A stretch of 64,000 nt of DNA, from the NCBI RefSeq assembly GCF_006345805.1, contig NC_042998.1, forward strand, positions 30,194,001-30,258,000. The letters run 5' to 3'. Origin of the DNA: Octopus sinensis (taxonomy: Eukaryota). Positions 1-56,656 of the stretch are shown one piece after another (the first letter of the stretch is position 1; each line of letters opens with the position of its first letter). The position numbers were made by a program, and so were the translations under genes. The notes under the pieces were generated by a model, which was not told the DNA's origin, did not search any database, and was given only the letters and a program-made list of their open reading frames with translations.

Positions 1-1015
1 CCATAAAAATTAAATTTTCGATGTAATCAAGTCTGAATTTGTGTGTGAGTCGCCAAAGTTACATCTAAATGGCAAATCGGAATCCACAGAGAATGATTTC
101 CGTTTAGTCTATTGTATACATCCCATATGTGAATATGAAACCCCATGGAACCATGGGGTTTCAAATTGTTCCGATCATGCATTGGCACGGTGTATGATAT
201 AATACTGTATCTGATATGATCAGCTAAAAAGAGATAAATTCATCATCAACAAGACTTTATATATATACTTGACTATTCTTAGACAATATAGATTTTTCTT
301 TTCTGCTAAAAGGAGGTAACTTTCATGTATCTAGATGTTAATAGAGAAAACGATATTGTATTGATTACTCAAACGCTAAATGATGAAGGAACTCACGAAA
401 AAGACATAACTCATCGAATTTGCATTAGCATTTACCGTAGGAAATATGCAGATTTTCAAGGGTTTAGGGAAGGTTTTAACATTCAATATGATATCGAATA
501 ACATTATTTTACAGATTGCCGATAGAAGACAGTACAGAAGACAACTTCTAGTGTAGCATGACAACAAAAATAATAAAATAAGAGACTTAGGTAAAAGAGA
601 GAAAGAGATGCCGACCTGCAGGCATTGAAAAATGTATTTTTGGACATTGCAAAATCAGCTGCATAAAGTAATGCAAGAATTAAATCATTGCAATGCTGTT
701 ATTCAATGAAATACTGCAGTATAAGGATGGAATTTGTTTCTTTAAAGACATAACAAAAATACATGACCCACCAATTTCTTTTACTACTGAGTTTCTTCAA
801 ATAAGTATTTAATTTTTTAATATTTTTCAGTTACTTCTGTGAGGGATAGACTCGTAAGTTTCAGATCTCCAGTAGGTCAGTAACAGGTAAACTATATTTA
901 CATTGGTTCAAACCTCAAGAGGTTTGCTCAGAAATTCTAGTGGAATAAACACCACAAACCACTTCATTTGAAATCAACGGTTTGTTTACTTCCTCTGCAA
1001 TTTCGACTCATTCCT
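1..1015 (+). repeat. Old decayed repeat family, copy 1 (possibly transposase-derived)
   Basis: Patchy similarity to 1500-2345(-) and 10880-11500(+), e.g. gatgccgacctgcaggcattg vs gatgcccaaatgcaaacctta. Reading frames are broken by many stops and the family is not identified. Confidence 0.35.
688..969 (+). repeat. 282-bp inverted duplication, left copy
   Basis: Reverse complement of 2422-2703. One substitution seen (gtttcttt vs gttttttt). Confidence 0.97.
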
Positions 1016-1499: not shown

Positions 1500-2345
1500 T
1501 ATATTTAACGGTTTAAGTCTTTCATTGTTTTTGTTTTCATGTATGAGAGTCCATCAATAGTTATCAACCCTGTCACAGAGAACATCGGCTTTTGCTTCCA
1601 TTTTGGATTAGACGATGGAAGTTTACGTGATCTTTCATGCTTTAATTCGAAATGTAGACGAACAACGATGTTTCATGTGAAAGGCTTGATAATTGTTGAG
1701 GGACTTCCTTAACATGAAACTAATGGTAGTCTTAACCTATTTATATATTAATATCTTCTGAATTGTATGAAAAAATACTAGAAGCAGCACCTCCAAGGAG
1801 TAAGCTTCTGTTAGACTGAATGTTAGCATCATGACGAACCATTTCAAATATTCTACGAAATGTTTCACTGTTACGGTAAAGGATTTCTTTGAAATCTAGC
1901 AGCTGCAAAATCTTAACAACTGTAGACCGCTCTATACACATGATCTGCAAGCACAAATTTTTAACAGGACTTTGATTGGAGATAAGAAATGGATTCTTCA
2001 CAAGTCTGTTAACTGCAAGAAACAACACCTAAGCTCAAATCATAAACCTTTATTACATCCTCAGCTTCAGGAACATCCTACCTGTCTGCTGTGGCATGAA
2101 TTTAGTAAAAGTCACTAAGCTTATCGGAGTGTTTTGGTGTTGTAACATTTGCAGACTGCTTTGAATGTGTAGAAGTAGAGGGATGTTGATACTGGTACCG
2201 TTGAAGTGGTTGCCGTTTTAAGGGATTGGTATGCTATTCTTTGTACTGCAGAGTTGTTCTTCATGGTTGGTTACACATGCGATTGGCCTTAGCTGGCCTT
2301 TAAGATTCAACGCTCAGACACATACACGCATACACACACACACAC
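1500..2345 (-). repeat. Old decayed repeat family, copy 2
   Basis: 2060-2345 aligns in reverse with 10880-11170 (e.g. ctaaattcatgccacagcagacaggtaggatgttcctgaagctgag vs ctaaattcaggccacgacagacagagaggatgttcttgaagccgag). Frames contain many stops. Confidence 0.6.
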
Positions 2346-2421: not shown

Positions 2422-2703
2422 AAATGAAGTGGTTTGTGGTGTTTATTCCACTAGAATTTCTGAGCAAACCTCTTGAGGTTTGAACCAATGTAAATATAGT
2501 TTACCTGTTACTGACCTACTGGAGATCTGAAACTTACGAGTCTATCCCTCACAGAAGTAACTGAAAAATATTAAAAAATTAAATACTTATTTGAAGAAAC
2601 TCAGTAGTAAAAGAAATTGGTGGGTCATGTATTTTTGTTATGTCTTTAAAAAAACAAATTCCATCCTTATACTGCAGTATTTCATTGAATAACAGCATTG
2701 CAA
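2422..2703 (-). repeat. 282-bp inverted duplication, right copy, directly abutting the PLE 5' junction
   Basis: Reverse complement of 688-969. Homology ends at 2703, where the PLE frame begins. Confidence 0.97.
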
Positions 2704-3972
2704 AAATCTAGAAAGGAACCTCCATTTAAAAAAGAATTACAATTACTTGAAGATAGTATATGGAAGGTGGTAAAAAATATTGAATTCCATAAATACCCAA
2801 ATAGAAATAATGAATATTTAAGGAATTTATCAATTAAAATTAAAGATATGAGAAATATGGATGGTATTATAGTACAATCTGATAAAACAAGGAACTTATA
2901 TAAATTAGATGTTAAATTATATGATAAACTATTAGGGAAAGAAATAATTAAAAAATATAAAATTGTTCCAGATGATATTCTTTATAATATTAATAAGGCC
3001 TCTAAAGTAGTAATGTTAAAATATGAGTTGGATAATAAAACTGAACCTTATGTACCTTTGCACCCCAGAATTACTCTTAAAGACCATAAAGATAATTTTT
3101 ATTCAGACCCTAAAGTTAGATTAATTTGCCCATGTAAATCGGATCTAGGTAAATTAAGTAAATTTATTTTAGATAAATATATTGATAAGTTAAATAAACT
3201 TAATTATTTAAAATTATGGTTTAGTAATAATAATACTTTGAAATGGTTTAATAATATTAAAGATAAAAATTGTTATAAATTTATTCAAATAGATATAGAT
3301 AATTATTATTCTTCTATTAATGAAATTGTGTTTAATAAAGCGCTTATTTTCGCAATGAATAAAGCGGGTATGTCACGGGAAGAAGTTAATGTAATTAAAA
3401 TGGCTAAGAAATCGCTAATTAAATATAAAAATAAATTATGGGCTAGGAATGATACTAGAGATTGTTTTGATATACCTATGGGAGCACCAGATTCTGTACA
3501 GGCTACTGATTTAGTAGGTATTTTTCTTTTATCTGAAATCCAATTAGAAAATCTTAAGATAGAGGGTGGTTTATATAGAGACGATCTTCTACTAGTTACA
3601 AAGAATTGTACTAATAGGAATCTACAAGTATATAAGAAAAAACTATATAGTTTCTTTAAAAGATATGGTTTAAGTATTACTATATATAAGGAGAATTATA
3701 ATGTTAATTATTTAGATGTTAATTTTAATCTTATTACAGGTAAAACACAACCATATCATAAACTTAATGAGAACCTTAGATATATAAATGTTAATAGTAA
3801 TCACCCATTTTCTATTAAAAAATCGTTGATTAATAATATAAGTAAACGTATTTCATTACTCTCTTATGATATAGAGATTTTTAATAAACATGCTAATTAT
3901 TATAATGAGGCCCTTAGAGGGGCAGGTTATAATAGGAATATTAATTTTATAATATTAGTGATAAAGATTTAA
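2698..3972 (+). CDS. PLE reverse transcriptase (5'-truncated; the frame shifts near 3945-3948)
   Basis: PLE RT motifs SDKTRNLY, ITLKDHK, RLICPCKSDLGKLSK, FIQIDIDNYYSSI (A), FDIPMGAPDS (B'), GLYRDD (C), NYLDVNF (E) and thumb YINVNSNHP. The TTG 'start' at 2698 lies in the inverted duplication and is not a real start. Confidence 0.95.
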   Translation: MQKSRKEPPFKKELQLLEDSIWKVVKNIEFHKYPNRNNEYLRNLSIKIKDMRNMDGIIVQSDKTRNLYKLDVKLYDKLLGKEIIKKYKIVPDDILYNINKASKVVMLKYELDNKTEPYVPLHPRITLKDHKDNFYSDPKVRLICPCKSDLGKLSKFILDKYIDKLNKLNYLKLWFSNNNTLKWFNNIKDKNCYKFIQIDIDNYYSSINEIVFNKALIFAMNKAGMSREEVNVIKMAKKSLIKYKNKLWARNDTRDCFDIPMGAPDSVQATDLVGIFLLSEIQLENLKIEGGLYRDDLLLVTKNCTNRNLQVYKKKLYSFFKRYGLSITIYKENYNVNYLDVNFNLITGKTQPYHKLNENLRYINVNSNHPFSIKKSLINNISKRISLLSYDIEIFNKHANYYNEALRGAGYNRNINFIILVIKI

Positions 3973-4964
3973 TTGTTAATTTTCGAGATACTTCTAATAA
4001 TAATTATAATTTTGTTAGGTTTAGTGGTAAAAATAATAGATATTATAAAAAAAATAATAAAAATGATAAAAATATAAATAAGAATAATAATAATAATAAT
4101 AAATATAATAATAATAATATAAATAAGAATAATATAAATAAAAATAAATTTAATAATTATTATAATAATTATATTGATAAATTTAATAATATTAATAATT
4201 CCTTAAATGCTGTACATAGATATAATTCTGATAATAATTTTAATAAAATAAAGAATTATAAATATATTTATAATAATGATAATAATAATAAGGTTAATAA
4301 GAATAAAATTTGGTTAATAGTTCCTTATGGAGATCAAGTAAAAACGAATATTATTAAAGAGATTTTAGATGTTATAGAACTATTTATTAGAGATAATCGT
4401 AAATATAGAAACATTTTCTCTTTTAATAATTTTGGAGTTGGTTACTCTACCACTAATAATGTTGGTAACATTATTTCTTCATTTAATAAATATAAACTGA
4501 ATAATTTTTATAAAAAGAAATTATTTGATAATAATATTAATAATGATAAGACTTATATTAATTGTACATGTAGAGATAAATCTAATTGTATTTTAAATAA
4601 TAATTGTGATATTAACGATGTAGTGTATAAATGTATAGTTACATTACATGATAATAACTTTAAGAATAATAATTACAAAAAAGCGGTTTATATAGGTTCT
4701 ACTTCCTCAAAAATAAAACTAAGAATCGCACAACATATGAATTCTTTTAAAAATAAAAACTTAATCAACTCAACCGGACTTAGTAAGTACATTTGGAGTC
4801 TTAAATCACTAAATATTAATTATAGTTTAATTTGGGAAATAATTTGTAAAACTAAATCATATACTATAGGAGCTAATTGTTGTTATTTATGCTCTAATGA
4901 GTTTAAAGAAATTTTATTTTATAAGTATGATAATTACTTAATACTGGTGAAGAGCGCAAAATAA
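3945..4964 (+). CDS. PLE ORF continuation: Asn-rich insert, linker, Cys motif and GIY-YIG endonuclease
   Basis: Translated codon by codon with no stop from 3945 to 4961. Contains IWLIVPYGDQVKTNI, YSTTNNVGNII, CTCRDKSNC...C, VVYK...VYIGST...KLRIAQH...TGLSKYIWSLK...WEII...CYLC. Confidence 0.93.
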   Translation, partial: FYNISDKDLIVNFRDTSNNNYNFVRFSGKNNRYYKKNNKNDKNINKNNNNNNKYNNNNINKNNINKNKFNNYYNNYIDKFNNINNSLNAVHRYNSDNNFNKIKNYKYIYNNDNNNKVNKNKIWLIVPYGDQVKTNIIKEILDVIELFIRDNRKYRNIFSFNNFGVGYSTTNNVGNIISSFNKYKLNNFYKKKLFDNNINNDKTYINCTCRDKSNCILNNNCDINDVVYKCIVTLHDNNFKNNNYKKAVYIGSTSSKIKLRIAQHMNSFKNKNLINSTGLSKYIWSLKSLNINYSLIWEIICKTKSYTIGANCCYLCSNEFKEILFYKYDNYLILVKSAK

Positions 4965-5014
4965 AATGCAGACATAAGTTACTTTACCTATATAATAAGT
5001 TTCATGATAAATAG
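4940..5014 (+). CDS. PLE ORF C-terminal tail after a second 1-nt frameshift
   Basis: The shifted frame reads NTGEERKIKCRHKLLYLYNKFHDK*, restoring the terminal KCRH motif typical of this endonuclease type. Confidence 0.8.
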   Translation, partial: NTGEERKIKCRHKLLYLYNKFHDK

Positions 5015-5309
5015 CAATAATAGTTCCCTTTTAGGTTACTTTAGTTTAGTTTAAATTAGTTTAGATAATATATTTTTGGTTATGTTGTCTAGGCTTTAAT
5101 TATAGTTAGTCTTTATTTATATTTCTTTGTTTTAATTAGTTCATTTTTAATGTATATATTTTGGAGGATATATTTATATGTTTATGGGTGTTATTTAGTG
5201 GTGTTTTTATTGAGTTTTGTATGTATGTGTGAATGTTTAAGATCCCTTTGTTTTTTGTTTTTTATTTGGTATGTTGAATTGACAGATTTTATTGGGTATT
5301 GTCTGTTAT

Positions 5310-6110
5310 AATAAAGTACACACACCCATAACAAATATAAGTGCCCACTTCATTCGATGTACCTGGAATTGCATGTGAGCCTCGGCATATACACCTAACG
5401 GCCACTCCCGCCCCACATGGATAAATAAACACATACATCCCCAAAAATGGGCGTAATCCCATTCACACCAATTATATGTATACAATTATACACACTAGAA
5501 TAATACATAACTAACCCAAATATACAGAACATACTAAAAATCACCAACTAACCACCATCACAAATGAAACCCACACCCATACAATGACAAAATTCCCCCC
5601 TCCATACCCAATTTACACCCACATAGTAATCCCAATATATTCATCCATATATGGACGTAAGTGCGTGAAGCACATGCACACAATTAATACGTACAACCCC
5701 CTAATACACACTTATATACATACGTATTAAGCTCGACATCCACAGTGATATGATTACACCCACTCACACCCAGATGGGTGAATTGCACAACCAGGGAACG
5801 CACACACACACGTGTGCGTTTTTTGATTGTGCAATTCGCCCATATGCATGTATGCGGGCGCGATTACATTGTTGCATATATCGAGCCCAAATAGCATGCA
5901 TATGTACATGTGAGGGGTACATGCAAATGACGTGCGCGTGTACCCCCTGCATTTATACCCGTGCGTGAATATACACATGGAGACTACCACACAGGTACAG
6001 ATGTGTATAGTAATGGGAGCCCCATCACTACACTCAATGTATACTCTCACCCATCCGCACGGATGTGTAAGTGTATCTCCGGTGTATATGTTGAGGTTTA
6101 TATGTAGCGT
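5310..6110 (+). ncRNA. Putative long fold-back RNA structure in the PLE 3' region
   Basis: Apex stem 5774-5805:5812-5843 (27 Watson-Crick, 4 G.U, 1 mismatch). Outer stem 5370-5395:6081-6106 (20 Watson-Crick, 6 G.U, no mismatch). Confidence 0.75.
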
Positions 6111-6164
6111 TGTGGAGGCGAATGTCGTTGAAATTGTGAATGAATGGGTGGAGTTGGGAATTGT

Positions 6165-9100
6165 AACCGGGTGGTGGACTAGCGTTGCTTGGAATTGTGA
6201 ATTGATTAGTGGGGTAGTGAGGTAGGCATCGGGAATAGGTTTGGGTTGCTGTAAGTTGTTTGTTAGAGCTGCTAAGGTGAGCTAAAGCTCATAAATATAT
6301 ATAATGATTTTTCATGGTAGTTTTTTAAAGAATCCATTCATTATAAATTTTTTTAAGTAGTGTTGGTTTGCTACGTGGATATAGTTTTTAGTTCCATTTA
6401 TTCTATTTCTCCATTCATAATTTAAATGACGTTTAATTTCTATGGCGCGTATTCTTTTTTTACATAAGTTATTTCTATGGTAACGTAATTTTGGTTTGGT
6501 TTTTTTAACGGCTAAGAATTTAATTTCACTTTATTATTTGAAATTGACTTGTAGTATGTATTTTATTTATCCTTATGTCATATTGTTATTTTTGATATTA
6601 TGGTTAATTACGATGTATTTAATGTTGTTTTTATAGGAGTGTTTATGTATATGAGATTGTGTGTGAGTTTTTAGTTGTATAATTATATTTATCTGTATGA
6701 GTGTGTGTGTGATATTGTGTGTATATATCGAGTTTAGTGAGTATGTATATGCGTATATGTGAGGGAGTATATGTATCTGTTGTGTGTGTGTGTTTTTTTT
6801 GTGTGTGTGTGTGTGTTTGTGTGTGAATGTGTATATGGGTTTGTTATTTAGGTTTTGGGATGTATGTGTTAATTTGTCTGTGTGGGGAGGGAGTGGGTTT
6901 TGGTGTATATTGAGGTTTATAAATTAGGATAGGTATGTGTATAAGTCGTGGGTCTGTGGTTTACGAGTGTGTATTTGTGTGTGAATGTTTAGGTTTAGGG
7001 GGATTACTATATAGGTTTGTTATAGAGTTTAGCAAAGGGAGATTTTATCGTTATATGTTTTTATGAGTTTTGGTTTATCATGGTTATTTTAGGGAATTCG
7101 TGGTAATTTGTCTATTTTCGATTTTGGTTGTTTTATTACATTGTTTCATTCATAATTTTTGAGTGGTGTTCGTTTTGCCACGTGTATAACCGGGTGGTGG
7201 ACTAGCGTTGCTTGGAATTGTGAATGGAATAGTGTAGTAGTGAGGTAGGCATAGAGAATGGGTTTGGGTTACTGCAAGTTGTTTGTTAGAGCTGCTAAGG
7301 TGAGCTAAAGCTCATAGATGTATATAATGAGTTTTCATGGTAGTTTTTTAAAGAATCCATTCATAATAAATTTTTTTAAGTAGTGTTGGTTTGCCACGTG
7401 GATATAGTTTTTAGTTCCATTTTTCTATTTCTCCATTCATAATTTAAATGACGTTTACTTTCCATGGCGCGTATTCTTTTTTTACATAAGTTATTTCTAT
7501 GGTAACGTAATTTTGGTTTGATTTTTTTAACGGCTAAGAATTTAATTTCACTTCATAATTTGACACTGAATTGTAAGTATGTATTTTATTTATCCTTATG
7601 TCATATTGTTATTTTTGATATTCTGGTTAATTACGATGTATTTAATGTTGTTTTCATAGGAGTGTTTATGTATATGAGATTGTGTGCGAGTTTTTAGTTG
7701 TATAATTTATTTATCTGTATGAGTGTGGGTGTGTAAATATTGTTGTATATATCGAGTTTAGTGAGTATGTATATGCGTATGTGAGGGAGTATATGTATCT
7801 GTTGTTGTGTGTGTGTGTTTTGCGTGTGTGTGTGTTTTGGTGTGAATGTGTATATGAGTTTATTATTTAGGTTTTGGGATGTATGTGTTAATTTGTCTGT
7901 GTGGGGGAGAGTGGTTTTTGGTGTATATTGAGGTTTATAAGTTAGTATAGGTATGTGTATAAGTCGTGGGTCTGTGGTTTACGAGTGTGTATTTGTGTGT
8001 GAATGTTTAGGTTAGGGAGATTGTTATATAGGTTTGTTATAGAGTTTAGCAAAGGGAGATTTATCGTTATATGTTTTTAGGAGTTTTGGTTTATCATGTT
8101 TTTTTTTTAGGGAATTCGTGGTAATTTGTCTATTTTCGATGTTGGTTTTTTTATTACATTGTTTCATTCATTCATAATTTTTGAGTGGTGTTCGTTTTGC
8201 CACGTGAATAACCGGGAGGTGGACTAGCGTTGTTTGGAATTGTGAATGGAATAGTGTAGTAGTGAGGTAGGCATAGAGAATGGGTTTGGGTTACTGCAAG
8301 TTGTTTGTTAGAGCTGATAAGGTGAGCTAAAGCTAATAGATGTAATAATATGATTTCATGGTAGTTTTTTAAGAATCCATTCATAATAAATTTTTTTTAA
8401 GTAGTGTTGGTTTGCCACGTGATATAGTTTTTAGTTCCATTTATTCTATTTCTCCATTCATAATTTAAATGACGTTTACTTTCCATGGCGCGTATTCTTT
8501 TTTTACATAAGTTATTTCTATGGTAACGTAATTTTGGTTTGATTTTTTTAACGGCTAAGAATTTAATTTCACTTCATAATTTGACACTGAATTGTAAGTA
8601 TGTATTTTATTTATCCTTATGTCATATTGTTATTTTTGATATTATGGTTAATTACGATGTATTTAATGTTGTTTTCATAGGAGTGTTTATGTATATGAGA
8701 TTGTGTGCGAGTTTTTAGTTGTATAATTTATTTATCTGTATGAGTGTGGGTGTGTAAATATGTTGTATATATCGAGTTTAGTGAGTATGTATATGCGTAT
8801 ATGTGAGGGAGTATATGTATCTGTTGTGTGTGTGTGTTTTGCGTGTGTGTGTGTTTGTGTGTGAATGTGTATATGGGTTTGTTATTTAGGTTTTGGGATG
8901 TATGTGTTAATTTGTCTGTGTGGGAGGGAGTGGGTTTTGGTGTATATGGAGGTTTATAAGTTAGTATAGGTATGTGTATAAGTCGTGGGTCTGTGGTTTA
9001 CGTGTGTGTTTGTGTGTGAATGTTTAGGTTAGGGGGATTACTATATAGGTTTGTTATAGAGTTTAGCAAAGGGAGATTTTATCGTTATATGTTTTTTAAG

Positions 9101-9224
9101 AGTTTTGGTTTATCATGGTTTTTTTTTAGGGATTTCGTAGTAATTTGTCTATTTTCGATGTTGGTTGTTTTTTACATTGTTTCATTCATAATGTTTTGAG
9201 TGGTGTTCGTTTTGCCACGTGAAT
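6165..9224 (+). repeat. Three tandem ~1.02-kb G/T-rich repeats
   Basis: Units start with aaccggg at 6165, 7188 and 8210 (1023, 1022 and ~1015 bp). The + strand is strongly C-depleted. Confidence 0.97.
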
Positions 9225-9990
9225 TTTATTTTTAATTCCATTTATTCCATTTCTCTCCATTCATTAATTTAGAGATGTTCGTTTCCAGAGCGGTTATACT
9301 TTTTATACATATGTTAAGTTCCTTGGTAAAGTAATTTTGTTTGGTGTATATGTTGAGGCTTATATGTACTTGTGGATGTGTGTGAGTGGGGTGGGTTTTG
9401 TATTAGTTATGGGTGTGTGGTTTACGTGTGGTTTTGTGTGTGAATGTATAGGTTAAAGGAATTGCTATATAAGTATGTTTAGTGTTTTTAGTAAAGGGAG
9501 GTTTTATCATTTCTGTTTTGTGAGTTTTAGCTTATCATGGTAGTTTTAAAAAGAATCCATTCATAATTTTTGTGTTTATTTGTCTGTGTGGGGTTGAGTG
9601 GGTTTTTGGAGTATATGTTGAGGTTTATATGTATGTATTGGTATGTGTAAGTGGTGTGGGTATTTGTATATGTCGTGGGTGTGTGGTTTACGTGTGTGTA
9701 TTTTGTGTGTGAATGTTTAGGTTAGGGGGATTGCTATATAGGTTTGTTATAGAGTTTAGTAAAGGGAGATTTTATCATTATATGTTTTTATGAGTTTTGG
9801 TTTATCATAGTAGGTTTGATAAGGAATTCGTAGTAATTTGTGTCTATTTGCGATGTCTGTTGTTTTATTGCATTGTTTCATTCATAATTTTTAAGTAGTG
9901 TTCGTTTTACCAAGTGAATATCATTTTTAATTCCATTTATTCCATTTCTCCGTTCATAGTTTTGAGTGATGTCCGTTTTCTAGAGTGTGA
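9225..9990 (+). repeat. More diverged sub-unit copies of the tandem repeat
   Basis: Recurrent modules gtctgtgtggg, ggtgtatatgttgagg, gtgtgaatgtttaggtt, aagggagattttatc and ttcataattttt. Confidence 0.85.
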
Positions 9991-10418
9991 ATGTGGGTTG
10001 TATGTGTGTGTGTGTGGGAGTATGAATAAGTATTGTGTTGAAGTATTTAGCTATTTTATTTATTTATAGTTGCCTAGACATTTTATGTGTATGTATAGGG
10101 ATATATATATAGGTGTGTGATTTAGTGTATGTAGTTAGATATGGTGATATATAATTAGGTATATGTGTATGGGTGTATATATAGTTTATTATTATATTAT
10201 TATTATTTTTTTTTGTTTTGTTTTATATTTTATATTTTATATTTTATATTTAATTGTTGATAGGTTTTTTTAGTTTATATATTGTTTATATATTGATTAT
10301 ATATGGATTATAGATGGGTTATATATGGATTATATACTTATATTTTTTCATTCATACTTTAATTATTTTAAAATTATTATTTTTATATTTTAAAATATTG
10401 ATTTTTTAGATTGGAAGT

Positions 10419-10461
10419 CCACCTGAAGATTGTCGATCAAGACAAGAAACGATTGTAGTGG
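10419..10461 (+). ncRNA. Minimal type I hammerhead ribozyme (PLE-type)
   Basis: ccac-CUGAAGA-uuguc(gaucaa)gacaa-GAAA-c(gauu)g-UA-gugg. Intact core, 5-bp stem II, 4-bp stem I, predicted cleavage after GUA at 10457. Confidence 0.88.
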
Positions 10462-10479
10462 CGGTTTTTTTTACTATTT

Positions 10480-10632
10480 ATTAAAATTTTATGTATTGAT
10501 TAAGTCTTTCCTTGTTTGTTTTGCAAAATAGTGGTTTTGTCTCTAATAATATTTTATAATATTTTACTATAAAATCGATTTAATACTAAATCTGATGTTT
10601 TCCCTGTAAATTTGGATTTATTCCCTAATATT
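10480..10632 (+). repeat. PLE 3' terminus / pseudo-LTR segment
   Basis: Aligns with 20955-21107(-). Both copies end at TA repeats. Confidence 0.85.
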
Positions 10633-10879
10633 TATTATTATTATATATATATGTATATATATATATATATGTGTGTGTGTATATATGTATGCGTAGATAT
10701 ATTTGTATTTGGGTATATGTGTGTGAATACATATATTTACATCTATGGGTATGAGTGTATCGGTATTCGTCTGCATGTAAGTAGATATACATACATATGT
10801 GTATGTATATATATATATATATGTATACGTGTGCGTATGTATGTATGTGTGTATGAATGTATATATATGTATGTGTGTG

Positions 10880-11500
10880 CGTATGCATGTGTATGCGTGT
10901 GTGTCCGAGCGTTGAATCTTAAAAGTCAGCTAACGACAACCGCATGTGTAAAGAAGTATGAAAACTTCAGAAGTTGATAGAAATAAAGTACCAATTCCTT
11001 TAAAAGGATAACCACTTTAGCAGTACCAGAATCACCATTCCACCTCATCTACACATTCAGATCAGTCTGACAACGTCCCTCAGTGGCAAAACACCCTGAT
11101 AAGATCAGTGATGACTACTAAATTCAGGCCACGACAGACAGAGAGGATGTTCTTGAAGCCGAGAATTTTAAACTGACAGAGACAATATTTACATATCGCT
11201 TGAGCAAACACAACTAGGTCTGATAATGCAGGAAAACGGTGGCATAATCGAGTAACAGCACACATAGAGAACTACGTTGTTTCGAAACAATTGTAGTGAT
11301 TAAAAAATAAGTGTCCAACCGTACCCCTTCCTGCTGACTCCAGTTTTTTTCCATTATGTATTCACACATGACAGATGCCCAAATGCAAACCTTATACAAA
11401 GTCCGTATAATTCTACTATTTGATAGTGCAGGGTAAATCTGAGAGTGGACGAGCCTTATGCTGCATTCTACTACGTTCTTAACAGAATACACCATAACTA
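10880..11500 (+). repeat. Old decayed repeat family, copy 3
   Basis: Diverged homology to 2060-2345(-) and patchy homology to ~600-800(+). Confidence 0.55.
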
Positions 11501-12402: not shown

Positions 12403-14419
12403 CCATCCCAGAGTAGTTCTAAAGAATGAAAGTCTAAGGATTTGATGTCCTATGAAAATCGTAACATTGGAGCAACCAAAGTAATGAGCCCAGTTGAAAA
12501 TTATTTCCATATTCCGAATATGCTTAATCGTCTGGGAGATATAATAATGCATAACAATGCGGCAGTGCTAGCGTGTTTCAAACACAACCGAAAAACATTT
12601 AGCTTCACTTTATTACCATAGAATATGTTTACCATCATTGAAATATGCTGCCAGTCTAATAATGATTTTGCAATTTCCATTTTAGTTCAAAGAAAAAAAA
12701 GACATATAAAGTTGCACTGATATCAGGGTACATAATAGGTTTCATCTTTTGTATTTCTTCGTCAGCTTTATGGGAAATTTTGGGAGATTGCTTAATATCC
12801 AAGCTTGACGTTTATAGAACATTGACTGCTCTTCAACATAGAAAATACTGAAGATGGTCTGTGACTATATACACACTTAAACAAAGCCTGGTGTGACAGT
12901 AAGCTCTATAAGAAGCAAGGATCTTGTCAGTAGCTTTAGCAAACTACCTGAAGTGGTTTCTCGTACAACAACTTGAAATGGATTGAATATCAAATATCCG
13001 AGACATGTACGGTGGTTAAATAATATATTTAATATGAATACTGGCGTATGTCGCAAATAGAAGACTGAGCAGTAAATGCCATTGTTGCCAAATGTCAGAA
13101 AGACACTTTCGAAACTAGAAGGAAACAACAACACTTGTTCCAAGCAAACACTACAAGCTGAAGTGTATCACTAGACACAAGTCTGCGTCCAATATTACAT
13201 TACTGTTGACGGAAGAGCTAGACAGTCATTATTGGAGAAAAAAATAGATCTGTAGACCGGTTCATGTCCTTCAAAACTGCTTCAGCGGATGGCAGACAGG
13301 TAGCAGTATATTATACATTCCTGAGACACCATCAATAACTGATGAATAAGTAAACGGACGGAGGAGAGAAAGAACACACGAAAAGAATAAAGCGCTAAGA
13401 ATATCAAAGAAAAAAATTAAACATGAAAGTAAATCTTCAAGAACGTAATAGGAAATTAAATAAATGACAAAAGTAAAAGAATAAACCACACGCAAAGTAA
13501 ATGATAGAGTAGAAAAAAAATTAAAGGAGAGAGAATATATATATAAAATATGAGAAGAAAAAACATTAGGAGGGAAGCGAATAAATAAAGTCAAAATCTT
13601 AAATGTACAGCATTCGAAAATTTGAATGATGCACGAGAGGTAATTTAATATACATAAAATGTAGAAATACAGAGGGATATGTATAGAGCATAGGTGACTG
13701 CAAACTAAGTAGAAATCGCCTACGTTAGAAGGTCAGGAATAAATATATATGAAAGTCTTTTCTTTAGACGTGCTGTGTTCAAATCACAATTATCTTTCCA
13801 TTTTAACATTTTTTTTTCTTCAGAATTCTGTTGCACAAGTCCCCTGCACATCGTTTCGGAAACAATTACTCTTAATCCTGTCACCGTCAACGCTTTCTCT
13901 CATTGCATCTTCAGAATAGATACACAAGTATACACAGACGAACGCGCAGAGCGTGCAGGCAAACGCAAATACACATAAACACTTAAACGCATACACATAT
14001 ATATGTATATATGCACATGTGTGTACATACATTTACATGTGTGTGTGTGTGTGTATTTCTGTGTAATTATGTATTTATGTATGTATAACCTTTTCACGAA
14101 CGTTATTGACAGTTATTGAACAGAAATTATCAATATACAAATGTTTCAGCTAAACAAATGTTTCAGAATCTGGCAAACATTGATGAATTAATGATATATG
14201 GGTGTTCGGTAAGAACATTTATTTTCTTTGCATCTATGTATTGTCTCAGAATGGATTTTTGTTTTTAGAAATTTCCAAACAGACGTCTTGTTCCCCAAAT
14301 ACATTTTTAATTCGTACTTTCTTTGTCAAACAAATCGGGAAGTTATAAACACATAAATAAATTGTCGCTTAATAAAGTAGTTTAGTCCTGTGACAGTTAC
14401 GTCTGTAAATATAAGAAAT

Positions 14420-18328: not shown

Positions 18329-18386
18329 TACATATATGTTATTAATATATATACCTGTGCGTGTACATAAATTTATATATACATAC

Positions 18387-18449
<63 letters not shown>

Positions 18450-18452
<3 letters not shown>

Positions 18453-19030
18453 TCACCCACCAGTGTAAAATTAACAGCAGACCTTGAAGCAATCCAGAGA
18501 AGATTCACAAAGAAGATCCTCTCTTTGCAACAGCTCAGCTACTGGGAAAGGTTGAAACAGCTAAGACTCTACTCCCTAGAGAGAAGACGGGAGAGGTATG
18601 CAGTAATATATATCTGGAAGATCCTGGAAGGAATTGTGCCAAATTTTGGCATTGTAAGCTACACCAATGCTAGAACGGGACGACACTGTATAGTGCCAAA
18701 GATCCCAGCAATGCCATCACGCTTTAGGACCAGCTTCTGCAACAGCCTGGGTTTCAAGGGCCCACAGCTCTTTAATATTCTCCCAAAGAGTCTGGGGAAC
18801 TTGCACAAAGTAGATGTAGCAGTTTTTAAATCAAAGCTGGACATCCTCCTGTCGAGAGTCCCAGATGAACCTACCTCACGGCAAGAGGTGCAAATGAGAA
18901 TAGCTATGTCAAAGTCCATTCTTCACCAAGTGCCACATATTAGAGGAGATTCTTCGTAATAACAGTGTAGCACAAAACGGCGGTGCATCAGCATGGCCGC
19001 AGCTCTGAGCTGAAACAAGCAAAAAAAAAA
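18450..19030 (+). mobile_element. CR1-like LINE 3' fragment
   Basis: WSP...[12 protein letters not shown]...[20 protein letters not shown]...GPQLFNILP...FKSKLD...PDEP. Begins directly after (TA)n. Confidence 0.9.
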
Positions 19031-20845: not shown

Positions 20846-20954
20846 ATATACGTCTAGACAAAATGTTTTGAATGAATGTAACGAAAGTAACACACATACA
20901 CATATGGAAAGGGAGGGATATTGTTATAGATTAAGTTATATATATATATATATA

Positions 20955-21243
20955 TAATAATATTAGGGAATAAATCCAAATTTACAGGGAAAAATTAGAT
21001 TTAGGACTGAATCCAATTTTATAGTAAAATATTATATAATATTAATTAGAGACAAAACCACTATTATGCAAATCAAACAAAGAAAGACTTAATCCAATAC
21101 ATAAAAATGTTTATATAAATTAAATAAAATTAAATTTTATTTTATTTTATTTTATTTTATTTATATAAAATTTTTTATGTATTGGATTAAGTCTTTCTTT
21201 GTTTGATTTGCATAATAGTGGTTTTGTCTCTAATTAATATTAT
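20955..21243. mobile_element. Solo PLE terminus in inverted (fold-back) arrangement
   Basis: 20955-21107(-) matches 10480-10632. 21036-21107 and 21172-21243 form a perfect 72-bp inverted repeat. Confidence 0.88.
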
Positions 21244-21394
21244 TAAGCTCCACACGCATCTCCGACAGAAGGTAATGGCGAATTTCTGCTGACTCTTTCC
21301 TCCTGCATCTTGCAGCTCACCTGCGTCCCGTCCAAGTAGGGGCCCTATACGCCAAGGAAACCGGGAAACCGGCCCTTATGAGCCATAATGAGCG

Positions 21395-23487: not shown

Positions 23488-24065
23488 CCACCCTTCATAA
23501 TTTGTATAAAATCCATACACACATATTCTTTTATCGGAATCTTACCGAGAGTTATTAAATGTGTTAAAGAAACAATCGAGACATTGTGATATAAACATGT
23601 TTTATGTTCCGGATGACTGAACTCGCAGACGGACGCTGATTTGCAACACACGACGCAAAATGTCAATATCTGAAAGTTACGTGGATTAGTTCTTGTCTAC
23701 GCCTGCTAGATTTGGTCCTCAAACATATGCAAACAGGTCTAAGAAAAATTCATCAAGTGAATTTTTGTCTTCGATTAGGACTCCATTTCTTTTTCACAGA
23801 CGAGTGTGTAGAGCAATTACGTCAGAAGCTAAAACAGCTGTCTTAGCTCTCATTTTGAAATTCTCGTTCTTCATTGAAAAGACTATTATATCGCAGTATG
23901 TGATACAAACTGATTTCCTTGTTTTTATTTATGAATGTATGCCTCGAAATAATACACAAATGTATTTCATAAATTCATACACATTATATATGCGTGTAGA
24001 TACGTGTATCTATATATGTATAAATAGGTATTTAGTATACATATACGTGTGTGTATATGTAATGC

Positions 24066-24104
<39 letters not shown>

Positions 24105-24144
24105 TGTATATATATATATATATATATTATATATGCATGTATAT

Positions 24145-24181
<37 letters not shown>

Positions 24182-24275
24182 TATATATATATATATATAT
24201 ATATATGCATGTATATATATATATATATATATATATATGCATGTATATATAAATATCTATATATATATATGCATG

Positions 24276-24308
<33 letters not shown>

Positions 24309-24365
24309 TATATATATATATATCTTGCATGTATATAAAAATATATGCATTTATATATATATATA

Positions 24366-25680
24366 TGCAGACGCAGCTACTGCATCATTTTGATGACATT
24401 TTGAGAGCCTTGGGAGAAGGTTCCAACACTGATGTCATCTACCTTGATTTCAGCAAGGCCTTTGACAGGGTTGATCATAAGATCCTTCTGAGAAAGCTGT
24501 CCAATATTGGTGTCACTGGAAAGCTGCTGCAGTGGATCAAGTGCTTCTTGTCTAACATAACCCAACATGTTGTAGTCGAAGGAGTCAAATCCAGCCCAGC
24601 CAAAGTCAGCAGTGGTGTCCCACAAGGCACTGTGTTGGGCCCACTTCTCTTCATCATCTACATAAATGATATTACTGACACCATCAAACACAGTAACATC
24701 AGAACCTTCGCTGATGATTCCAAGCTCCAGAAGGTCATCAATGGCGTGGATGACCGAATAAACCTTCAGTCAGACCTACTGGCTGTTGTCCAATGGGCGG
24801 AAAAGAATAACATTTGCTAAATAATGAAGACAAATTTGAACTGATCCACTTTGGAAGAGAGGACCGCTCTGAAACTCCAATACTCTCTTCCTTCTAGAGA
24901 AATTCTCATGGCATCCACAACATCAGAGACCTGGGAGTAACAGTGGACAACAACATAAGCTGGGCTACACATATAAGCAGCAAAGTTGACATGGCCCGCA
25001 GAATGTGTTCCTGGATTCTCAGAACCTTCCAGTCGAGAGATTCCCACGCTATTATCCTTCTCTTCTCCACTTTTGAGACCGACCCCACCTTGAATACTGC
25101 TGTCCACTGTGGTCTCCCTACACAAAACAAAATATTATGAGAATTGAAGCTCCCCAAAGGTCAATCACAAAAAGATAGATGGCATGTCAGACCTTGACTA
25201 CTGGGGTAGACTAGAGAATGAATTGTATTCACTCCAACGACGCCGTGAACGCTACATTATCTGTATGATGTGGAAAATATTCCATCAGCACTGTCCGAAT
25301 GATGTTGGCATCACCTTCAAAATGCATCCAAGACTTGGACCACGTGCCATCCGTCCACAACAAAAATCTAAATCGCATCACATAACGACAATACGGCACA
25401 ACTATTTCACCTCAATTGGACCTGCTCTCTTCAACATTACACCAGGGCACGTCAAAAAAGAAACTGACCACACAAAATTCAAGAAGTCTTGGACAAATTC
25501 CTTCAAACAGTACCGGACAAACCACCCACACCCGGATATGTCTCCGCAAACAATAACTCTCTGCTCGAATGGGCCTTGGTGCCCAAATCCAGAACTGAAA
25601 GACTTCGCCAGGTGGTGCTATTAAGTTAGACATGGCCTGGGCCAATACTGGCCAAAACCTTTCTAAGTTATTCTAAGTTA
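24366..25680 (+). mobile_element. CR1-like LINE, 5'-truncated RT and 3' UTR, inside an ATGCATGT(AT)n array
   Basis: [49 protein letters not shown]. Several 1-nt frameshifts and a ctaagtta repeated tail. Confidence 0.95.
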
Positions 25681-56590: not shown

Positions 56591-56656
56591 ATATCGTTAC
56601 AAACACACACACACACACATACACACACACACATATATATACATATATATATATAT

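What the first reader, a model, noticed from the sequence alone, without database searches (positions are those of the whole stretch)
5806..9224. The 1-kb tandem repeats are A>G / C>T-converted copies of the hairpin 3' arm
5955-5980 (atacccgtgcgtgaatatacacatgg) versus 6813-6838 (gtgtttgtgtgtgaatgtgtatatgg) shows 10 differences in 26 nt, all A>G (4) or C>T (6). The block gcatatatcgagccc...gcatgcatatg maps to gtatatatcgagttt...gtatgtatatg the same way. These are both the deamination outcomes (A-to-I, C-to-U) and exactly the changes that keep pairing with the C/A-rich arm through wobble. Candidate causes are RNA editing fixed by retrotransposition (cephalopods have extensive ADAR editing), a strand-biased RT/ssDNA mutation spectrum, or selection for G.U-rich duplexes that evade dsRNA surveillance. 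The sequence alone cannot separate them.
Basis: partly seen in the sequence, partly recalled or inferred. Interest (0 to 1): 0.8.

Follow-up and report, generated by a model that had tools for sequence, protein, structure and literature searches.

The report
Wobble hairpins in a retrotransposon tail
The repeats lie in the unusually long 3' tail of a dead Penelope-like retrotransposon whose coding strand has lost almost all its C to T, so its old inverted repeats now pair through G:U wobble and fold only as sense-strand RNA; this is a curious natural case of strand-specific hypermutation, seen at a single locus and without a proven cause.

Summary
About 170-300 nt of each 1,022-nt unit (the "S" segment) is homologous to the 3' arm B (5806-6164), well beyond shuffled controls. 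Over 195 aligned columns, B versus the unit consensus gives C>T 40, T>C 0, A>G 11, G>A 4 and 12 transversions. The C/T asymmetry is overwhelming. The A/G asymmetry is marginal (p=0.05).

The "wobble with the C/A-rich arm" idea is wrong in detail. On the + strand, arm L pairs with the units mostly by Watson-Crick pairs and with B through A.C mismatches.

Wobble is real elsewhere. Inverted repeats inside the array differ by 48-51 G:U-type transitions against 2-3 A.C-type. They fold into ~290-nt hairpins only as + strand RNA (-106 kcal/mol, z=-9.5, versus -21, z=-0.07).

The whole region is the 5.7-kb 3' UTR of a 5'-truncated, AT-rich Penelope-like element, between its GIY-YIG end and a hammerhead-like motif. 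C depletion of the sense strand is element-wide, including ORF synonymous sites (C/(C+T)=0.09 versus 0.29-0.73 in five relatives).

Best reading: sense-strand transition bias acquired in the RNA/cDNA phase, with wobble as a by-product. Polarity (C>T versus mirror-image A>G) cannot be fixed from one locus.

The parts
2698..3972 (+). Reverse-transcriptase part of a Penelope-like element (PLE) ORF. The copy is 5'-truncated at about 2704 and broken by a frame change near 3972.
   Evidence: The 424-aa ORF carries a YRDD motif. 754 homologues were found, best E=7e-87, 35-48% identity, many carrying PF26215, PF28514, PF01541 or PF00078. The sequence left of 2703 is unrelated DNA that is duplicated elsewhere in the window.
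3999..4964 (+). Poly-Asn linker (about 4000-4300), a Cys-rich motif and the C-terminal GIY-YIG endonuclease part of the PLE ORF.
   Evidence: Frame translation. 33% identity, E=2e-24, to residues 492-676 of homologue P0077, whose residues 599-639 score as Pfam GIY-YIG. The window protein itself gets no Pfam hit.
4965..5310 (+). Start of the 3' UTR. It is T-rich and C-poor, with no inverted partner.
   Evidence: Composition A .25, C .06, G .17, T .51, close to ORF 4-fold sites at A .33, C .05, G .10, T .52.
5311..5805 (-). Arm L: about 1.7 inverted copies of the S segment, C/A-rich on the + strand. It is the 5' arm of the palindrome centred at 5806-5811.
   Evidence: Composition A .39, C .30, G .11, T .21. 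Its reverse complement aligns to B 20 sd above shuffles and to unit segments 7681-7992. In the + strand global fold it pairs with 6691-6896 of unit 1.
5806..6164 (+). Arm B: the only S-type copy with balanced base composition (C .195).
   Evidence: The L:B hairpin folds on both strands but better as minus-strand RNA: -204.5 versus -156.1 kcal/mol for 5560-6050, z about -10 versus -6 to -7.
6164..9224 (+). Three tandem units of about 1,022 bp: U1 6164-7186, U2 7187-8208, U3 8209-9224. G+T is about 70% and C 6-7%.
   Evidence: Repeat spacing of 1018-1023. Pairwise identity 95.1-97.2%. Composition.
7621..8040 (+). S segment of unit 2, with equivalents at about 6600-7020 and 8640-9040. This is the part homologous to B and to the reverse complement of L. 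C is .03 and G .31.
7038..7336 (+). Hairpin X1:Y2 across the U1/U2 junction, with arms 7038-7184 and 7191-7336. It folds only as + strand RNA.
   Evidence: -106.2 kcal/mol, z=-9.5 on +; -21.3 kcal/mol, z=-0.07 on -. 119 pairs: 53 A:U, 21 G:C, 45 G:U. Arm differences are 48 G:U-type against 2 A.C-type.
8056..8357 (+). Hairpin X2:Y3 across the U2/U3 junction, paralogous to X1:Y2.
   Evidence: -84.4 kcal/mol, z=-6.2 on +; -18.1 kcal/mol, z=+0.17 on -. Arm differences are 49 against 2.
6107..6448 (+). Third long + strand-only hairpin, formed by the end of B plus the start of U1 against 6334-6448.
   Evidence: -91 kcal/mol, z=-6.2 on +; -31 kcal/mol, z=-1.8 on - for 6130-6429. Arm differences are 50 G:U-type against 3 A.C-type.
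9225..10020 (+). Decayed partial units: the 3' third of the unit repeated twice, plus fragments. Segment 9774-9942 is a further X-type arm that can pair with 6142-6308.
   Evidence: Tile mapping, alignment. Purine/pyrimidine identity 89% over 169 nt. Arm differences are 51 against 2.
10420..10462 (+). Candidate minimal type-I hammerhead ribozyme: CCAC / CUGAAGA / 5-bp helix II / GAAA / C-GAUU-G / UA / GUGG.
   Evidence: The core pattern has 5 hits in the window against 0.34 expected. The layout was read from the sequence. No Rfam family scores it, even in a 111-nt search, so this is motif-level evidence only. A related PLE (L003) has the same kind of motif about 60 nt before a (TA)n tract.
10465..10657 (+). 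3'-terminal segment of the element, ending at a (TA)n/(TG)n microsatellite.
   Evidence: Two more copies, 88% identical, lie as an inverted pair at 20937-21129(-) and 21150-21245(+) next to (TA)n.

Best explanation
The finding lies in the 5.7-kb 3' untranslated region of a dead (5'-truncated, frame-broken) Penelope-like retrotransposon on the + strand.

This element lineage carries a strong transition bias specific to the sense strand. The dominant change is C to T, and it is visible everywhere in the element. A smaller and less certain A to G component shows mainly in the segments that have an inverted partner.

The bias follows the orientation of each repeat copy rather than the orientation of the locus. 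I therefore infer that it was acquired while the sequence was sense-strand RNA, or was being copied from it. Candidates are C-to-U and/or A-to-I deamination of the RNA, or a biased copying error. Reverse transcription would then have hard-wired the changes over retrotransposition cycles.

C>U and A>G are exactly the changes that turn G:C and A:U pairs into G:U. Old inverted repeats in the tail therefore still fold into ~150-bp stems as + strand RNA, with about 38% G:U pairs. The complementary strand, which gets A.C mismatches, does not fold. On this reading, wobble conservation is a by-product and not something selected.

Arm B is the least converted paralogue of one sub-segment (S) of the unit. 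It is not the literal parent of the 1-kb repeats. Arm L is an inverted copy of a half-converted S.

Shown: the anatomy, the homology, the substitution matrices, the strand-specific folding and the element-wide C depletion.
Inferred: the RNA/cDNA-phase timing, the enzyme and the polarity.
For: Context:
- PLE RT and GIY-YIG ORF on the + strand.
- A hammerhead-like motif and the element terminus lie downstream of the array. A relative has the same end architecture but only about 150 nt between its ORF and the hammerhead.

Substitutions:
- B versus units: C>T 40, T>C 0, A>G 11, G>A 4, transversions 12.
- B versus reverse-complemented L: C>T 25, T>C 9 (p=3e-5).
- The overlap of the two conversions is 24 sites, which equals the 24 expected if they were independent from a B-like state.
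- Transition:transversion is about 5:1 here but below 1 among the tandem units (28:33). This is a special process, not ordinary decay.

Element-wide bias:
- ORF 4-fold sites are A .33, C .05, G .10, T .52.
- C/(C+T) is 0.09 against 0.29-0.73 in five relatives. G/(A+G) is 0.24 against 0.24-0.66.
- UTR segments without an inverted partner have the same T-rich, C-poor make-up.

Orientation: L is C/A-rich on the + strand although both of its flanks are G/T-rich or balanced. The conversion therefore tracks the copy and not the locus.

Structure:
- Three long hairpins fold only as + strand RNA: z=-9.5, -6.2 and -6.2 against -0.07, +0.17 and -1.8.
- Arm differences are 48:2, 49:2, 51:2 and 50:3 in favour of G:U-type (each p<1e-11).
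- The whole tail folds to -1397 kcal/mol on + against -720 on -.
Against: - Polarity is not determined. Every transition class can equally be read as the mirror image: A>G from an AT-rich ancestor, with B's C residues derived.
- B sits in the same transcript as the converted units yet is unconverted. An RNA-phase process does not explain that without extra steps such as orientation flips, late acquisition or protection.
- The 25 L=A/B=C positions cannot be made by + strand C>U in the present arrangement.
- G is enriched (G/(A+G) 0.53-0.61) precisely in the segments with an inverted partner. It is 0.21-0.40 in the ORF and the rest of the UTR. C>T alone does not explain this.
- Relatives differ widely in synonymous-site composition, so the ancestral state is uncertain.
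- No C-to-U RNA or plus-strand deaminase is known to me to act on retroelements in molluscs.
- This is a single locus. No sister copies were found and there is no expression data.
Confidence: 0.45

Rival explanations
1. ADAR-only mirror model. The tail was natively AT-rich and C-poor like the rest of the element. Its long intramolecular duplexes in the sense RNA were hyper-edited (A to I, read as G). Reverse transcription fixed the edits, turning about half of the A:U pairs into G:U. On this reading the units are closer to the native state, and the C residues of B are derived: edits made while that copy was in the inverted, A-rich orientation, followed by a second inversion.
For: - G enrichment is confined to segments with a bona fide inverted partner: X, Y and S have G/(A+G) 0.53-0.61, against 0.29-0.40 in partner-less UTR and 0.21-0.24 in the ORF.
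- If every G:U came from A:U, 40-52% of such A residues changed. From my own knowledge, this is about the ceiling reported for ADAR on long duplexes.
- Arm Y has the purine/pyrimidine skeleton of an inverted copy of the pyrimidine-rich baseline, with half of its A replaced by G.
- Neighbour trends run in the ADAR direction. 5' neighbour: U .48, A .48, C .41, G .32. 3' neighbour: G/C .69 against A/U .39. At B/U A>G sites, 5' U has p=0.03.
- Among the units, A>G is 8 against T>C 0, although T is twice as common.
- ADAR1 hyper-editing of dsRNA is documented in molluscs (abstract of PMC6651903, listed).
Against: - ORF synonymous sites show a pyrimidine shift (C/(C+T) 0.09) with no purine shift relative to relatives. 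The element-wide process is therefore C>T and not A>G.
- B then needs two successive inversions, or editing of a minus-strand RNA that has no route back into DNA.
- About 20 G>A changes in the three-way comparison remain unexplained.
- The neighbour preferences are weak and are confounded by GC patchiness.
Confidence: 0.2
2. Selection. G:U-rich duplexes are maintained because they are useful to the element or to the host. They keep an RNA hairpin while destroying the DNA-level inverted repeat and the foldability of the antisense strand. That would dampen repeat-triggered silencing, Dicer or ADAR attack, or palindrome instability. This is a natural counterpart of engineered hpRNA[G:U] transgenes.
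For: - Extreme asymmetry of arm differences, 198 G:U-type against 9 A.C-type.
- Stems of about 120 pairs survive in three or four places, although the arms are only about 55% identical at DNA level.
- In the engineered design, replacing every C of the sense arm by T keeps the hairpin, prevents self-silencing of the inverted-repeat DNA and gives more uniform RNAi (PMC9263138).
Against: - The same G+T skew and C loss occur in UTR segments with no partner, at ORF synonymous sites and at unpaired positions of the hairpins. G/(A+G) is 0.47 unpaired against 0.54 paired, and C/(C+U) 0.13 against 0.18. Pairing is therefore not needed to explain the composition.
- A strand-specific transition bias gives the 48:2 pattern automatically.
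- There are only two full paralogous hairpins, so no covariation test is possible.
- This copy is dead, and relatives have no such tail.
Confidence: 0.12
3. In-situ DNA-level strand-biased deamination after insertion. Candidates are transcription or R-loop exposure of the non-template strand, replication asymmetry, or a RIP-like attack on repeated DNA. The mutation type (C>T and A>G on the exposed strand) is the same as that which makes mitochondrial heavy strands G+T-rich.
For: - C>T and A>G on one strand is the classical single-strand deamination signature (my own knowledge).
- If majority rule is trusted, the differences among the tandem units show per-base C>T about 3.7 times G>A, and A>G 8 against T>C 0.
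- All L/B transition classes can be written as C deaminations on one strand or the other of a GC-richer palindrome: 41 on the - strand, 19 on the + strand.
Against: - The skew stops at the element's borders. The flanks and the rest of the 64-kb window are unskewed.
- L is skewed the opposite way inside the same locus, and B is not skewed at all.
- ORF synonymous sites are skewed while the reading frame stays open over 424 and about 320 codons. That points to evolution in an active lineage and not to post-insertion decay.
- The recent between-unit changes have transition:transversion below 1.
- RIP is known only in fungi and hits both strands.
Confidence: 0.1
4. Artefact of low complexity. Two unrelated alternating purine-pyrimidine tracts ((TG)n, (TA)n, (CA)n) necessarily differ only by transitions, and G/U-rich RNA folds well anyway.
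For: - Much of S and B is alternating purine-pyrimidine. In purine/pyrimidine coding it hits every microsatellite in the window.
- Rfam 'hits' in the region are microsatellite-type miRNA false positives.
Against: - Alignment scores lie 9-20 sd above dinucleotide-preserving shuffles.
- Non-repetitive landmarks are conserved in all copies.
- Hairpin z-scores of -6 to -9.5 against dinucleotide shuffles of the same G/U-rich sequence.
Confidence: 0.03

Closest known systems
Canonical endonuclease-positive Penelope-like elements (Penelope/Poseidon, Neptune and Nematis type), as described in PMC8557442
   Same: - A single ORF with RT followed by a C-terminal GIY-YIG endonuclease, preceded by a Cys-rich motif.
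- 5' truncation.
- A hammerhead-type motif near the 3' end.
- Insertion next to a (TA)n microsatellite.
- Inverted or truncated extra copies of the terminus nearby.
   Different: - About 5.4 kb of repeats lie between the stop codon and the hammerhead. A relative (L003) has about 110 nt there.
- The ORF is 20-23% G+C, with synonymous C/(C+T) of 0.09.
- It has a poly-Asn linker.
- The sense strand is G+T-skewed, whereas relatives L002 and L003 are A+C-rich in sense.
Editing footprints of deaminases in retroelement paralogues (APOBEC G>A clusters in LTR elements, PMC4866542; DNA/RNA editing traces, PMC2873906)
   Same: Paralogous retroelement sequences differ by dense, one-directional transitions with few transversions. 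This is attributed to deamination during the RNA/cDNA phase and fixed on integration.
   Different: - The dominant change here is C>T on the sense strand. The APOBEC footprints described there are read as G>A on the sense strand (minus-strand cDNA deamination).
- There is no TC/CC context.
- Conversion is near saturation (95% of C).
- It affects an active lineage's synonymous sites, not just dead copies.
Engineered G:U hairpin-RNA transgenes, hpRNA[G:U] (PMC9263138)
   Same: C-to-T replacement destroys the DNA inverted repeat but leaves an RNA hairpin held by G:U wobble. The engineered constructs have 18-26% G:U pairs. The hairpin exists on one strand only.
   Different: - This case is natural, not designed.
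- Both arms carry conversions.
- 35-38% of pairs are G:U.
- No evidence of small-RNA production or of any silencing role.
Single-strand deamination asymmetries: the G+T-rich strand of animal mitochondrial DNA and transcription-associated strand asymmetry in nuclear genes (my own knowledge)
   Same: The same pair of changes (C>T and A>G) accumulates on one strand and gives G+T excess.
   Different: - Those act in situ on a chromosome region and are mild in nuclear genes.
- Here the skew is extreme, bounded by a mobile element, and follows the orientation of each repeat copy.
Repeat-induced point mutation (RIP) of fungi (my own knowledge)
   Same: Repeated DNA riddled with C>T transitions. There is a possible CpA preference in the half-converted arm (13 of 17 CpA against 12 of 24 others, p=0.11).
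   Different: - RIP mutates both strands and makes sequences AT-rich, with C>T and G>A together.
- It is known only in fungi.
- It destroys ORFs.

Membership tests
Penelope-like element (EN+) | Reverse transcriptase homologous to PLE RTs | tested here: met
   424-aa ORF with 754 homologues, best E=7e-87, covering 93-99% of the query. Many are ~700-aa proteins carrying PF26215, PF28514, PF01541 or PF00078. The YRDD motif was read from the sequence. The local Pfam copy gives no hit, and there is no PDB relative by sequence.
Penelope-like element (EN+) | C-terminal GIY-YIG endonuclease | tested here: met
   Window 4200-4961 aligns at E=2e-24 to P0077 residues 492-676. That span includes P0077's Pfam GIY-YIG match (599-639, E=1e-5) and the YIGST...R..H residues. 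There is no direct Pfam hit for the window protein.
Penelope-like element (EN+) | Hammerhead ribozyme motif in the terminal repeat region | tested here: inconclusive
   10420-10462 has a complete conserved core and a plausible helix I, II and III layout. The pattern is enriched 5 against 0.34 expected. No Rfam hammerhead model scores it, and the local MFE fold is not special.
Penelope-like element (EN+) | Pseudo-LTR, tandem or inverted insertion structure; microsatellite target | tested here: inconclusive
   The element ends at a (TA)n/(TG)n tract at about 10640. Its terminal ~190 nt recurs as an inverted pair beside (TA)n at about 21000. No second full copy or direct pLTR was seen in the window.
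ADAR hyper-editing footprint fixed by retrotransposition | Dense A>G, with no T>C, on the transcribed strand within dsRNA-forming repeats | tested here: inconclusive
   A>G 11 against G>A 4 (p=0.05) and T>C 0 in B versus units. The G:U pairs in the hairpins could come from A>G or from C>U, and the two cannot be separated.
ADAR hyper-editing footprint fixed by retrotransposition | 5' neighbour preference with G depleted; 3' G enriched | tested here: inconclusive
   The trends run in the expected direction. 5' neighbour: U .48, A .48, C .41, G .32. 3' neighbour: G/C about .69 against A/U about .39. 5' U is enriched at the 11 A>G sites (p=0.03), but 5' G is not testable (1 of 11 against 4 of 28). 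The result is confounded by base-composition patchiness.
ADAR hyper-editing footprint fixed by retrotransposition | RNA-versus-DNA A-to-G mismatches in transcripts of the locus | not testable with these tools
APOBEC-type retroelement hypermutation | Strand-specific cytosine-deamination clusters between paralogues | tested here: met
   C>T 40 against T>C 0, and G>A only 4. However, the change is on the sense strand, not the antisense cDNA strand.
APOBEC-type retroelement hypermutation | Characteristic dinucleotide context (TC or CC; WRC for AID) | tested here: not met
   In the half-converted arm, conversion by 5' neighbour is A 11 of 14, G 9 of 15, C 5 of 10, T 0 of 2. By 3' neighbour it is A 13 of 17, G 7 of 12, C 4 of 11. 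There is no TC/CC preference. The purine-5' trend is not significant (p=0.16).
RIP (fungal repeat-induced point mutation) | C>T on both strands of duplicated DNA, CpA-biased, ORFs destroyed | tested here: not met
   The change is one-stranded within each copy. Long ORF stretches stay open. The CpA trend is not significant (p=0.11). The host is an animal.
hpRNA-type (G:U) hairpin locus | Long RNA hairpin that exists on one strand through G:U pairs | tested here: met
hpRNA-type (G:U) hairpin locus | Transcription and processing into small RNAs that act on a target | not testable with these tools
   No small-RNA or RNA-seq data are available. No target was sought.

The most novel reading that the evidence does not exclude
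A retrotransposon lineage, in what is probably an octopod, carries kilobases of 3' UTR whose duplexes have been rewritten into G:U wobble by heritable deamination of its own sense RNA (ADAR A-to-I on the duplexes plus a C-to-U activity). The resulting sense-only hairpins are retained because they escape responses triggered by dsRNA or inverted repeats. This would be a natural equivalent of the engineered hpRNA[G:U] design. It would also be a direct genomic record of RNA editing entering the germline through reverse transcription.
Probability: 0.15. Interest if true: 0.8.

Novelty: new variant of a known kind. Interest (0 to 1): 0.55.

Why it matters
If the skew was written in the RNA/cDNA phase, this element is a compact natural record of a strand-specific mutator acting on a retrotransposon. 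It would show how far such a process can go: 95% of C lost, and synonymous sites driven to 5% C while the reading frame stayed open.

It also shows a general consequence that is easy to overlook. One-strand C>U/A>G change does not destroy RNA hairpins. It converts them into structures that exist on one strand only and are no longer inverted repeats at the DNA level. That property has been engineered deliberately in plant RNAi constructs.

If the source genome is a cephalopod with very active ADAR, the locus gives a concrete place to test whether RNA editing leaves heritable footprints through retrotransposition.

If it is only biased decay of one dead copy, it is a curiosity.

Tried and rejected
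- **Rfam.** Scans at gathering and permissive thresholds found no hammerhead or other real family. The only hits were microsatellite-type miRNA false positives. No tRNAs were found.
- **Sister copies.** Two pattern scans of metagenome contigs, one for the S motif and one for the hammerhead, found nothing. A protein-word search with the spurious ORF 5932-6222 also found nothing. The closest PLE proteins are only 35-48% identical.
- **Tails of relatives.** The Argonauta hians locus and four ENA loci have no G/T-rich hairpin tail. The one G/T-rich block, in L003, is an unrelated 30-bp minisatellite beyond the element's end.
- **Polarity tests that did not discriminate:**
  - three-way parsimony;
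  - per-arm conversion fractions under the two models;
  - neighbour context;
  - paired versus unpaired composition;
  - outgroup polarisation of unit differences with the partial units, where there were too few sites;
  - comparison of the three copies of the 3' terminus.
- **CpG retention (a bisulfite-like pattern).** Rejected. 10 of 12 CpG cytosines in B are converted in the units. CpG observed/expected in the units is about 1.1.
- **Assembly fold-back artefact for the L:B palindrome.** Rejected, because the arms are only about 60% Watson-Crick complementary.
- **Pfam** on the window's own RT and endonuclease pieces gave no meaningful hit.

Full report
**What is at the coordinates**

Reading 4500-10500 with the repeat finder gives the following layout.
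- L, 5311-5805, is a C/A-rich stretch.
- A palindrome centre lies at 5806-5811.
- B, 5806-6164, has ordinary base composition.
- Three tandem units follow: U1 6164-7186, U2 7187-8208, U3 8209-9224. Repeat spacing is 1018-1023 bp and identity is 95.1-97.2%.
- Partial units run on to about 10020.

The units have A .22, C .065, G .25, T .46. The rest of the window is unskewed.

**Check of the observation**

The scores were 9-13 sd (units) and 20 sd (L) above 200 dinucleotide-preserving shuffles. Plain match/mismatch scoring gave 6-8 sd.

The homologous part is one sub-segment, S. B 5820-5981 matches 6668-6839, 7691-7858 and 8712-8877, at 86-89% identity in purine/pyrimidine coding. The remaining ~70% of each unit has no counterpart in B.

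Over columns 5811-6005, B against the unit consensus gives:

| Change | Count |
|---|---|
| C>T | 40 of 42 C |
| T>C | 0 of 52 T |
| A>G | 11 of 47 A |
| G>A | 4 of 49 G |
| transversions | 12 |

It is only borderline for A/G (p=0.05).

B against reverse-complemented L gives C>T 25, T>C 9, A>G 16, G>A 10.

One caveat applies. Much of S is alternating purine-pyrimidine sequence, which in purine/pyrimidine coding matches every microsatellite in the window. 'Transitions only' is therefore partly built in. The shuffle controls and unique landmarks (ATATCGAG, GTGAGGG, GTGAAT) show that the homology is nevertheless real.

**What surrounds it**

The + strand upstream encodes a Penelope-like element (PLE).
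- A 424-aa reverse-transcriptase ORF at 2698-3972 has 754 homologues. The best has E=7e-87, and one comes from the octopod Argonauta hians.
- After a frame break come a poly-Asn linker and a C-terminal part at 4200-4964. This part aligns at E=2e-24 to the GIY-YIG region of homologue P0077.
- The copy is 5'-truncated at about 2704. The DNA to its left is unrelated and is duplicated in inverted orientation at 688-969.

Downstream of the array:
- 10420-10462 has the full hammerhead core and a type-I helix layout. No Rfam model scores it.
- 10465-10657 is a terminal segment ending at a (TA)n/(TG)n tract. Two further copies form an inverted pair beside (TA)n at about 21000.
- A related PLE (L003) shows the same end: ORF, about 110 nt, a CTGATGA...GAAAC motif, about 40 nt, then (TA)n.

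The finding therefore lies inside a 5.7-kb 3' UTR that is about 5.4 kb longer than in that relative.

**The wobble claim**

I aligned each 5' arm with the reverse complement of its 3' arm and sorted the transition differences by what they mean for the + strand RNA.
- L:B has 60-78 A.C mismatches and only 21-35 G:U. L:B is wobble-rich only as minus-strand RNA. It folds better that way: -204.5 against -156.1 kcal/mol for 5560-6050, with z about -10 against -6 to -7.
- L against the S segment of the units has 212-220 Watson-Crick pairs, 46-53 G:U and 21-23 A.C.
- In the global + strand fold of 4965-10640, L pairs with unit 1 (5402-5775 with 6691-6896) and not with B.

**Where the wobble really is**

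Purine/pyrimidine-coded comparison revealed inverted repeats inside the array. Each is invisible to ordinary comparison because both arms are G/T-rich.
- The end of each unit (X, e.g. 7038-7184) pairs with the start of the next (Y, 7191-7336).
- 6107-6212 pairs with 6334-6448.
- 6142-6308 pairs with 9774-9942.

Their arm differences are 48:2, 49:2, 50:3 and 51:2 in favour of G:U over A.C (each p<1e-11).

| Region | + strand RNA | - strand RNA |
|---|---|---|
| 7040-7339 | -106.2 kcal/mol, z=-9.5 | -21.3 kcal/mol, z=-0.07 |
| 8058-8357 | -84.4 kcal/mol, z=-6.2 | -18.1 kcal/mol, z=+0.17 |
| 6130-6429 | -91 kcal/mol, z=-6.2 | -31 kcal/mol, z=-1.8 |

In the first hairpin, 45 of 119 pairs are G:U, 53 are A:U and 21 are G:C. 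These are real, strand-specific RNA hairpins of about 150-bp stems.

**Is the bias local or element-wide?**

ORF 4-fold degenerate sites are A .33, C .05, G .10, T .52.

| Source | C/(C+T) at 4-fold sites | G/(A+G) at 4-fold sites |
|---|---|---|
| Window PLE | 0.09 | 0.24 |
| Five relatives (L001, L002, L003, L006, L007) | 0.29-0.73 | 0.24-0.66 |

The pyrimidine ratio of this lineage is far outside the family range. Its purine ratio is at the low edge of the range.

UTR segments without an inverted partner (4965-5310, 7340-7620, 10021-10419, 10458-10640) have the same T-rich, C-poor make-up. Their G/(A+G) is 0.29-0.40. Segments with a partner (S, X, Y) have G/(A+G) of 0.53-0.61.

Long stretches of ORF remain open, so the C depletion arose in an active lineage and not by decay of this copy.

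**Timing and strand**

L is C/A-rich on the + strand, between a G/T-rich flank and the balanced B. The conversion therefore follows the orientation of each copy and not the locus. The skew also stops at the element's ends.

Differences among the three tandem units have transition:transversion below 1 (28:33). B versus units has about 5:1. The process that separated B from the units is therefore not the recent background.

By majority rule, those recent changes still show A>G 8 against T>C 0, and per-base C>T about 3.7 times G>A. The polarity of the unit-1-specific changes is uncertain, and the partial units gave too few sites to settle it.

Together these points favour acquisition in the RNA/cDNA phase over an in-situ chromosomal process. 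This is an inference.

**Polarity cannot be fixed**

In the three-way comparison (columns 5806-6005) the three branches are about equal.
- 31 sites where B differs from the other two: 24 C/T and 5 A/G.
- 31 sites specific to the units: C>T 14, A>G 6, G>A 3, T>C 0, transversions 8.
- 32 sites specific to L: T>C 8, A>G 8, G>A 9, C>T 0, transversions 7.

The 24 sites where both the units and L have T against B's C equal the number expected if 95% and 60% conversion had occurred independently from a B-like state.

Every class can also be read as the mirror image, A>G from an AT-rich ancestor.
- If all G:U pairs in the hairpins came from A:U, 40-52% of those A residues changed.
- If all came from G:C, 61-85% of the C residues changed.
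- Neighbour context, per-arm fractions and paired-versus-unpaired composition did not separate the two readings.

The ORF comparison favours C>T as the element-wide process. The partner-specific G enrichment favours an additional duplex-specific A>G. I therefore rank a C>T-dominated sense-strand bias first (0.45) and an ADAR-only model second (0.20).

The unsolved point in both models is B. It lies in the same transcript as the units but kept its C. Orientation flips through the inverted duplications that PLEs are known to make (PMC8557442) could explain this, but that is speculation.

**Selection or by-product?**

A one-strand C>U/A>G bias turns G:C and A:U into G:U automatically. The 48:2 asymmetry and the sense-only folding therefore need no selection. 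The same composition is seen at unpaired positions, in partner-less UTR and at synonymous sites.

A functional reading remains possible. It has an engineered precedent: hpRNA[G:U] transgenes, in which every sense-arm C is replaced by T. They keep the hairpin while abolishing the DNA inverted repeat and its self-silencing (PMC9263138). With only two complete paralogous hairpins, no covariation test could be made.

**Comparison with known systems**

The element qualifies as an EN+ Penelope-like element on RT and GIY-YIG homology. The hammerhead and pseudo-LTR criteria are only partly met.

The substitution pattern resembles deaminase footprints described in retroelement paralogues (PMC4866542, PMC2873906), with three differences:
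- the affected strand is the sense strand;
- there is no TC/CC context;
- conversion is near saturation.

The pattern has the same chemistry as single-strand deamination skews (mitochondrial heavy strand, transcription-coupled asymmetry; my own knowledge). It differs in being bounded by a mobile element and tied to copy orientation. RIP does not fit, because here the change is one-stranded, ORFs are kept and the host is an animal.

**Limits**

This is one locus. No sister copies could be found. There are no expression or small-RNA data. The source organism is inferred only from the best protein hits and the repeat landscape. The hammerhead is a motif-level call.

**Verdict**

- The units are not simply copies of the 3' arm.
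- The A>G half is weak.
- The wobble argument was attached to the wrong duplex.

It is best filed as a new variant of strand-specific retroelement hypermutation, with an unusual structural consequence. Interest is 0.55.

Noticed in passing
window 688-969 (-) and 2422-2703 (+): A 282-bp inverted duplicate, 99.6% identical. Its + copy ends exactly where the PLE sequence begins (2703/2704). This may be a rearrangement linked to the insertion.
   Followed up: partly
window 12739-12765 (-), 37592-37624 (+), 43442-43462 (+), 46993-47034 (-): Four further matches to the hammerhead core pattern CTGANGA...GAAAC. Together with the one at 10423 that makes 5 in the window against 0.34 expected. None is scored by Rfam, and the one at 37592 lacks an allowed cleavage triplet on inspection.
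   Followed up: partly
window 20937-21129 (-) and 21150-21245 (+): An inverted pair of the PLE's terminal ~100-190 nt, 88% identical to 10465-10657, lying next to a (TA)n tract. It looks like an extremely 5'-truncated PLE insertion with the adjacent inverted copy typical of PLEs.
   Followed up: partly
window 2060-2320 (+), 10905-11163 (-), 56656-56764 (-): Copies of a SINE-like repeat (76-94% identical) with (CA)n/(TA)n/(TG)n tails. Two of them face each other across the PLE, so the element sits between their microsatellite tails.
   Followed up: no
window 4000-4300; 3970-3999: The PLE ORF has a ~100-codon Asn/Lys-rich low-complexity linker between the RT and endonuclease parts. There is one frame break at about 3972.
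   Followed up: no
loci L002 329-2152 and L003 10001-11560, compared with window 2698-4961: Related PLE ORFs have the opposite sense-strand skew at synonymous sites: A+C-rich, with C/(C+T) of 0.71-0.73. The closest relatives (L006, L007) are nearly symmetric at 0.29-0.35. Strand skew therefore differs sharply between PLE lineages.
   Followed up: partly
locus L003 13100-13690: A ~30-bp G/T-rich minisatellite (TTTGAATTTGCCGTGATCGA...) lies about 1 kb beyond the end of a related PLE. It is unrelated to the array studied here.
   Followed up: no
window 18336-18959, 23693-24820, 25184-25624: ORF fragments of non-LTR (LINE-type) reverse transcriptases, interrupted by TA/TG microsatellites.
   Followed up: no
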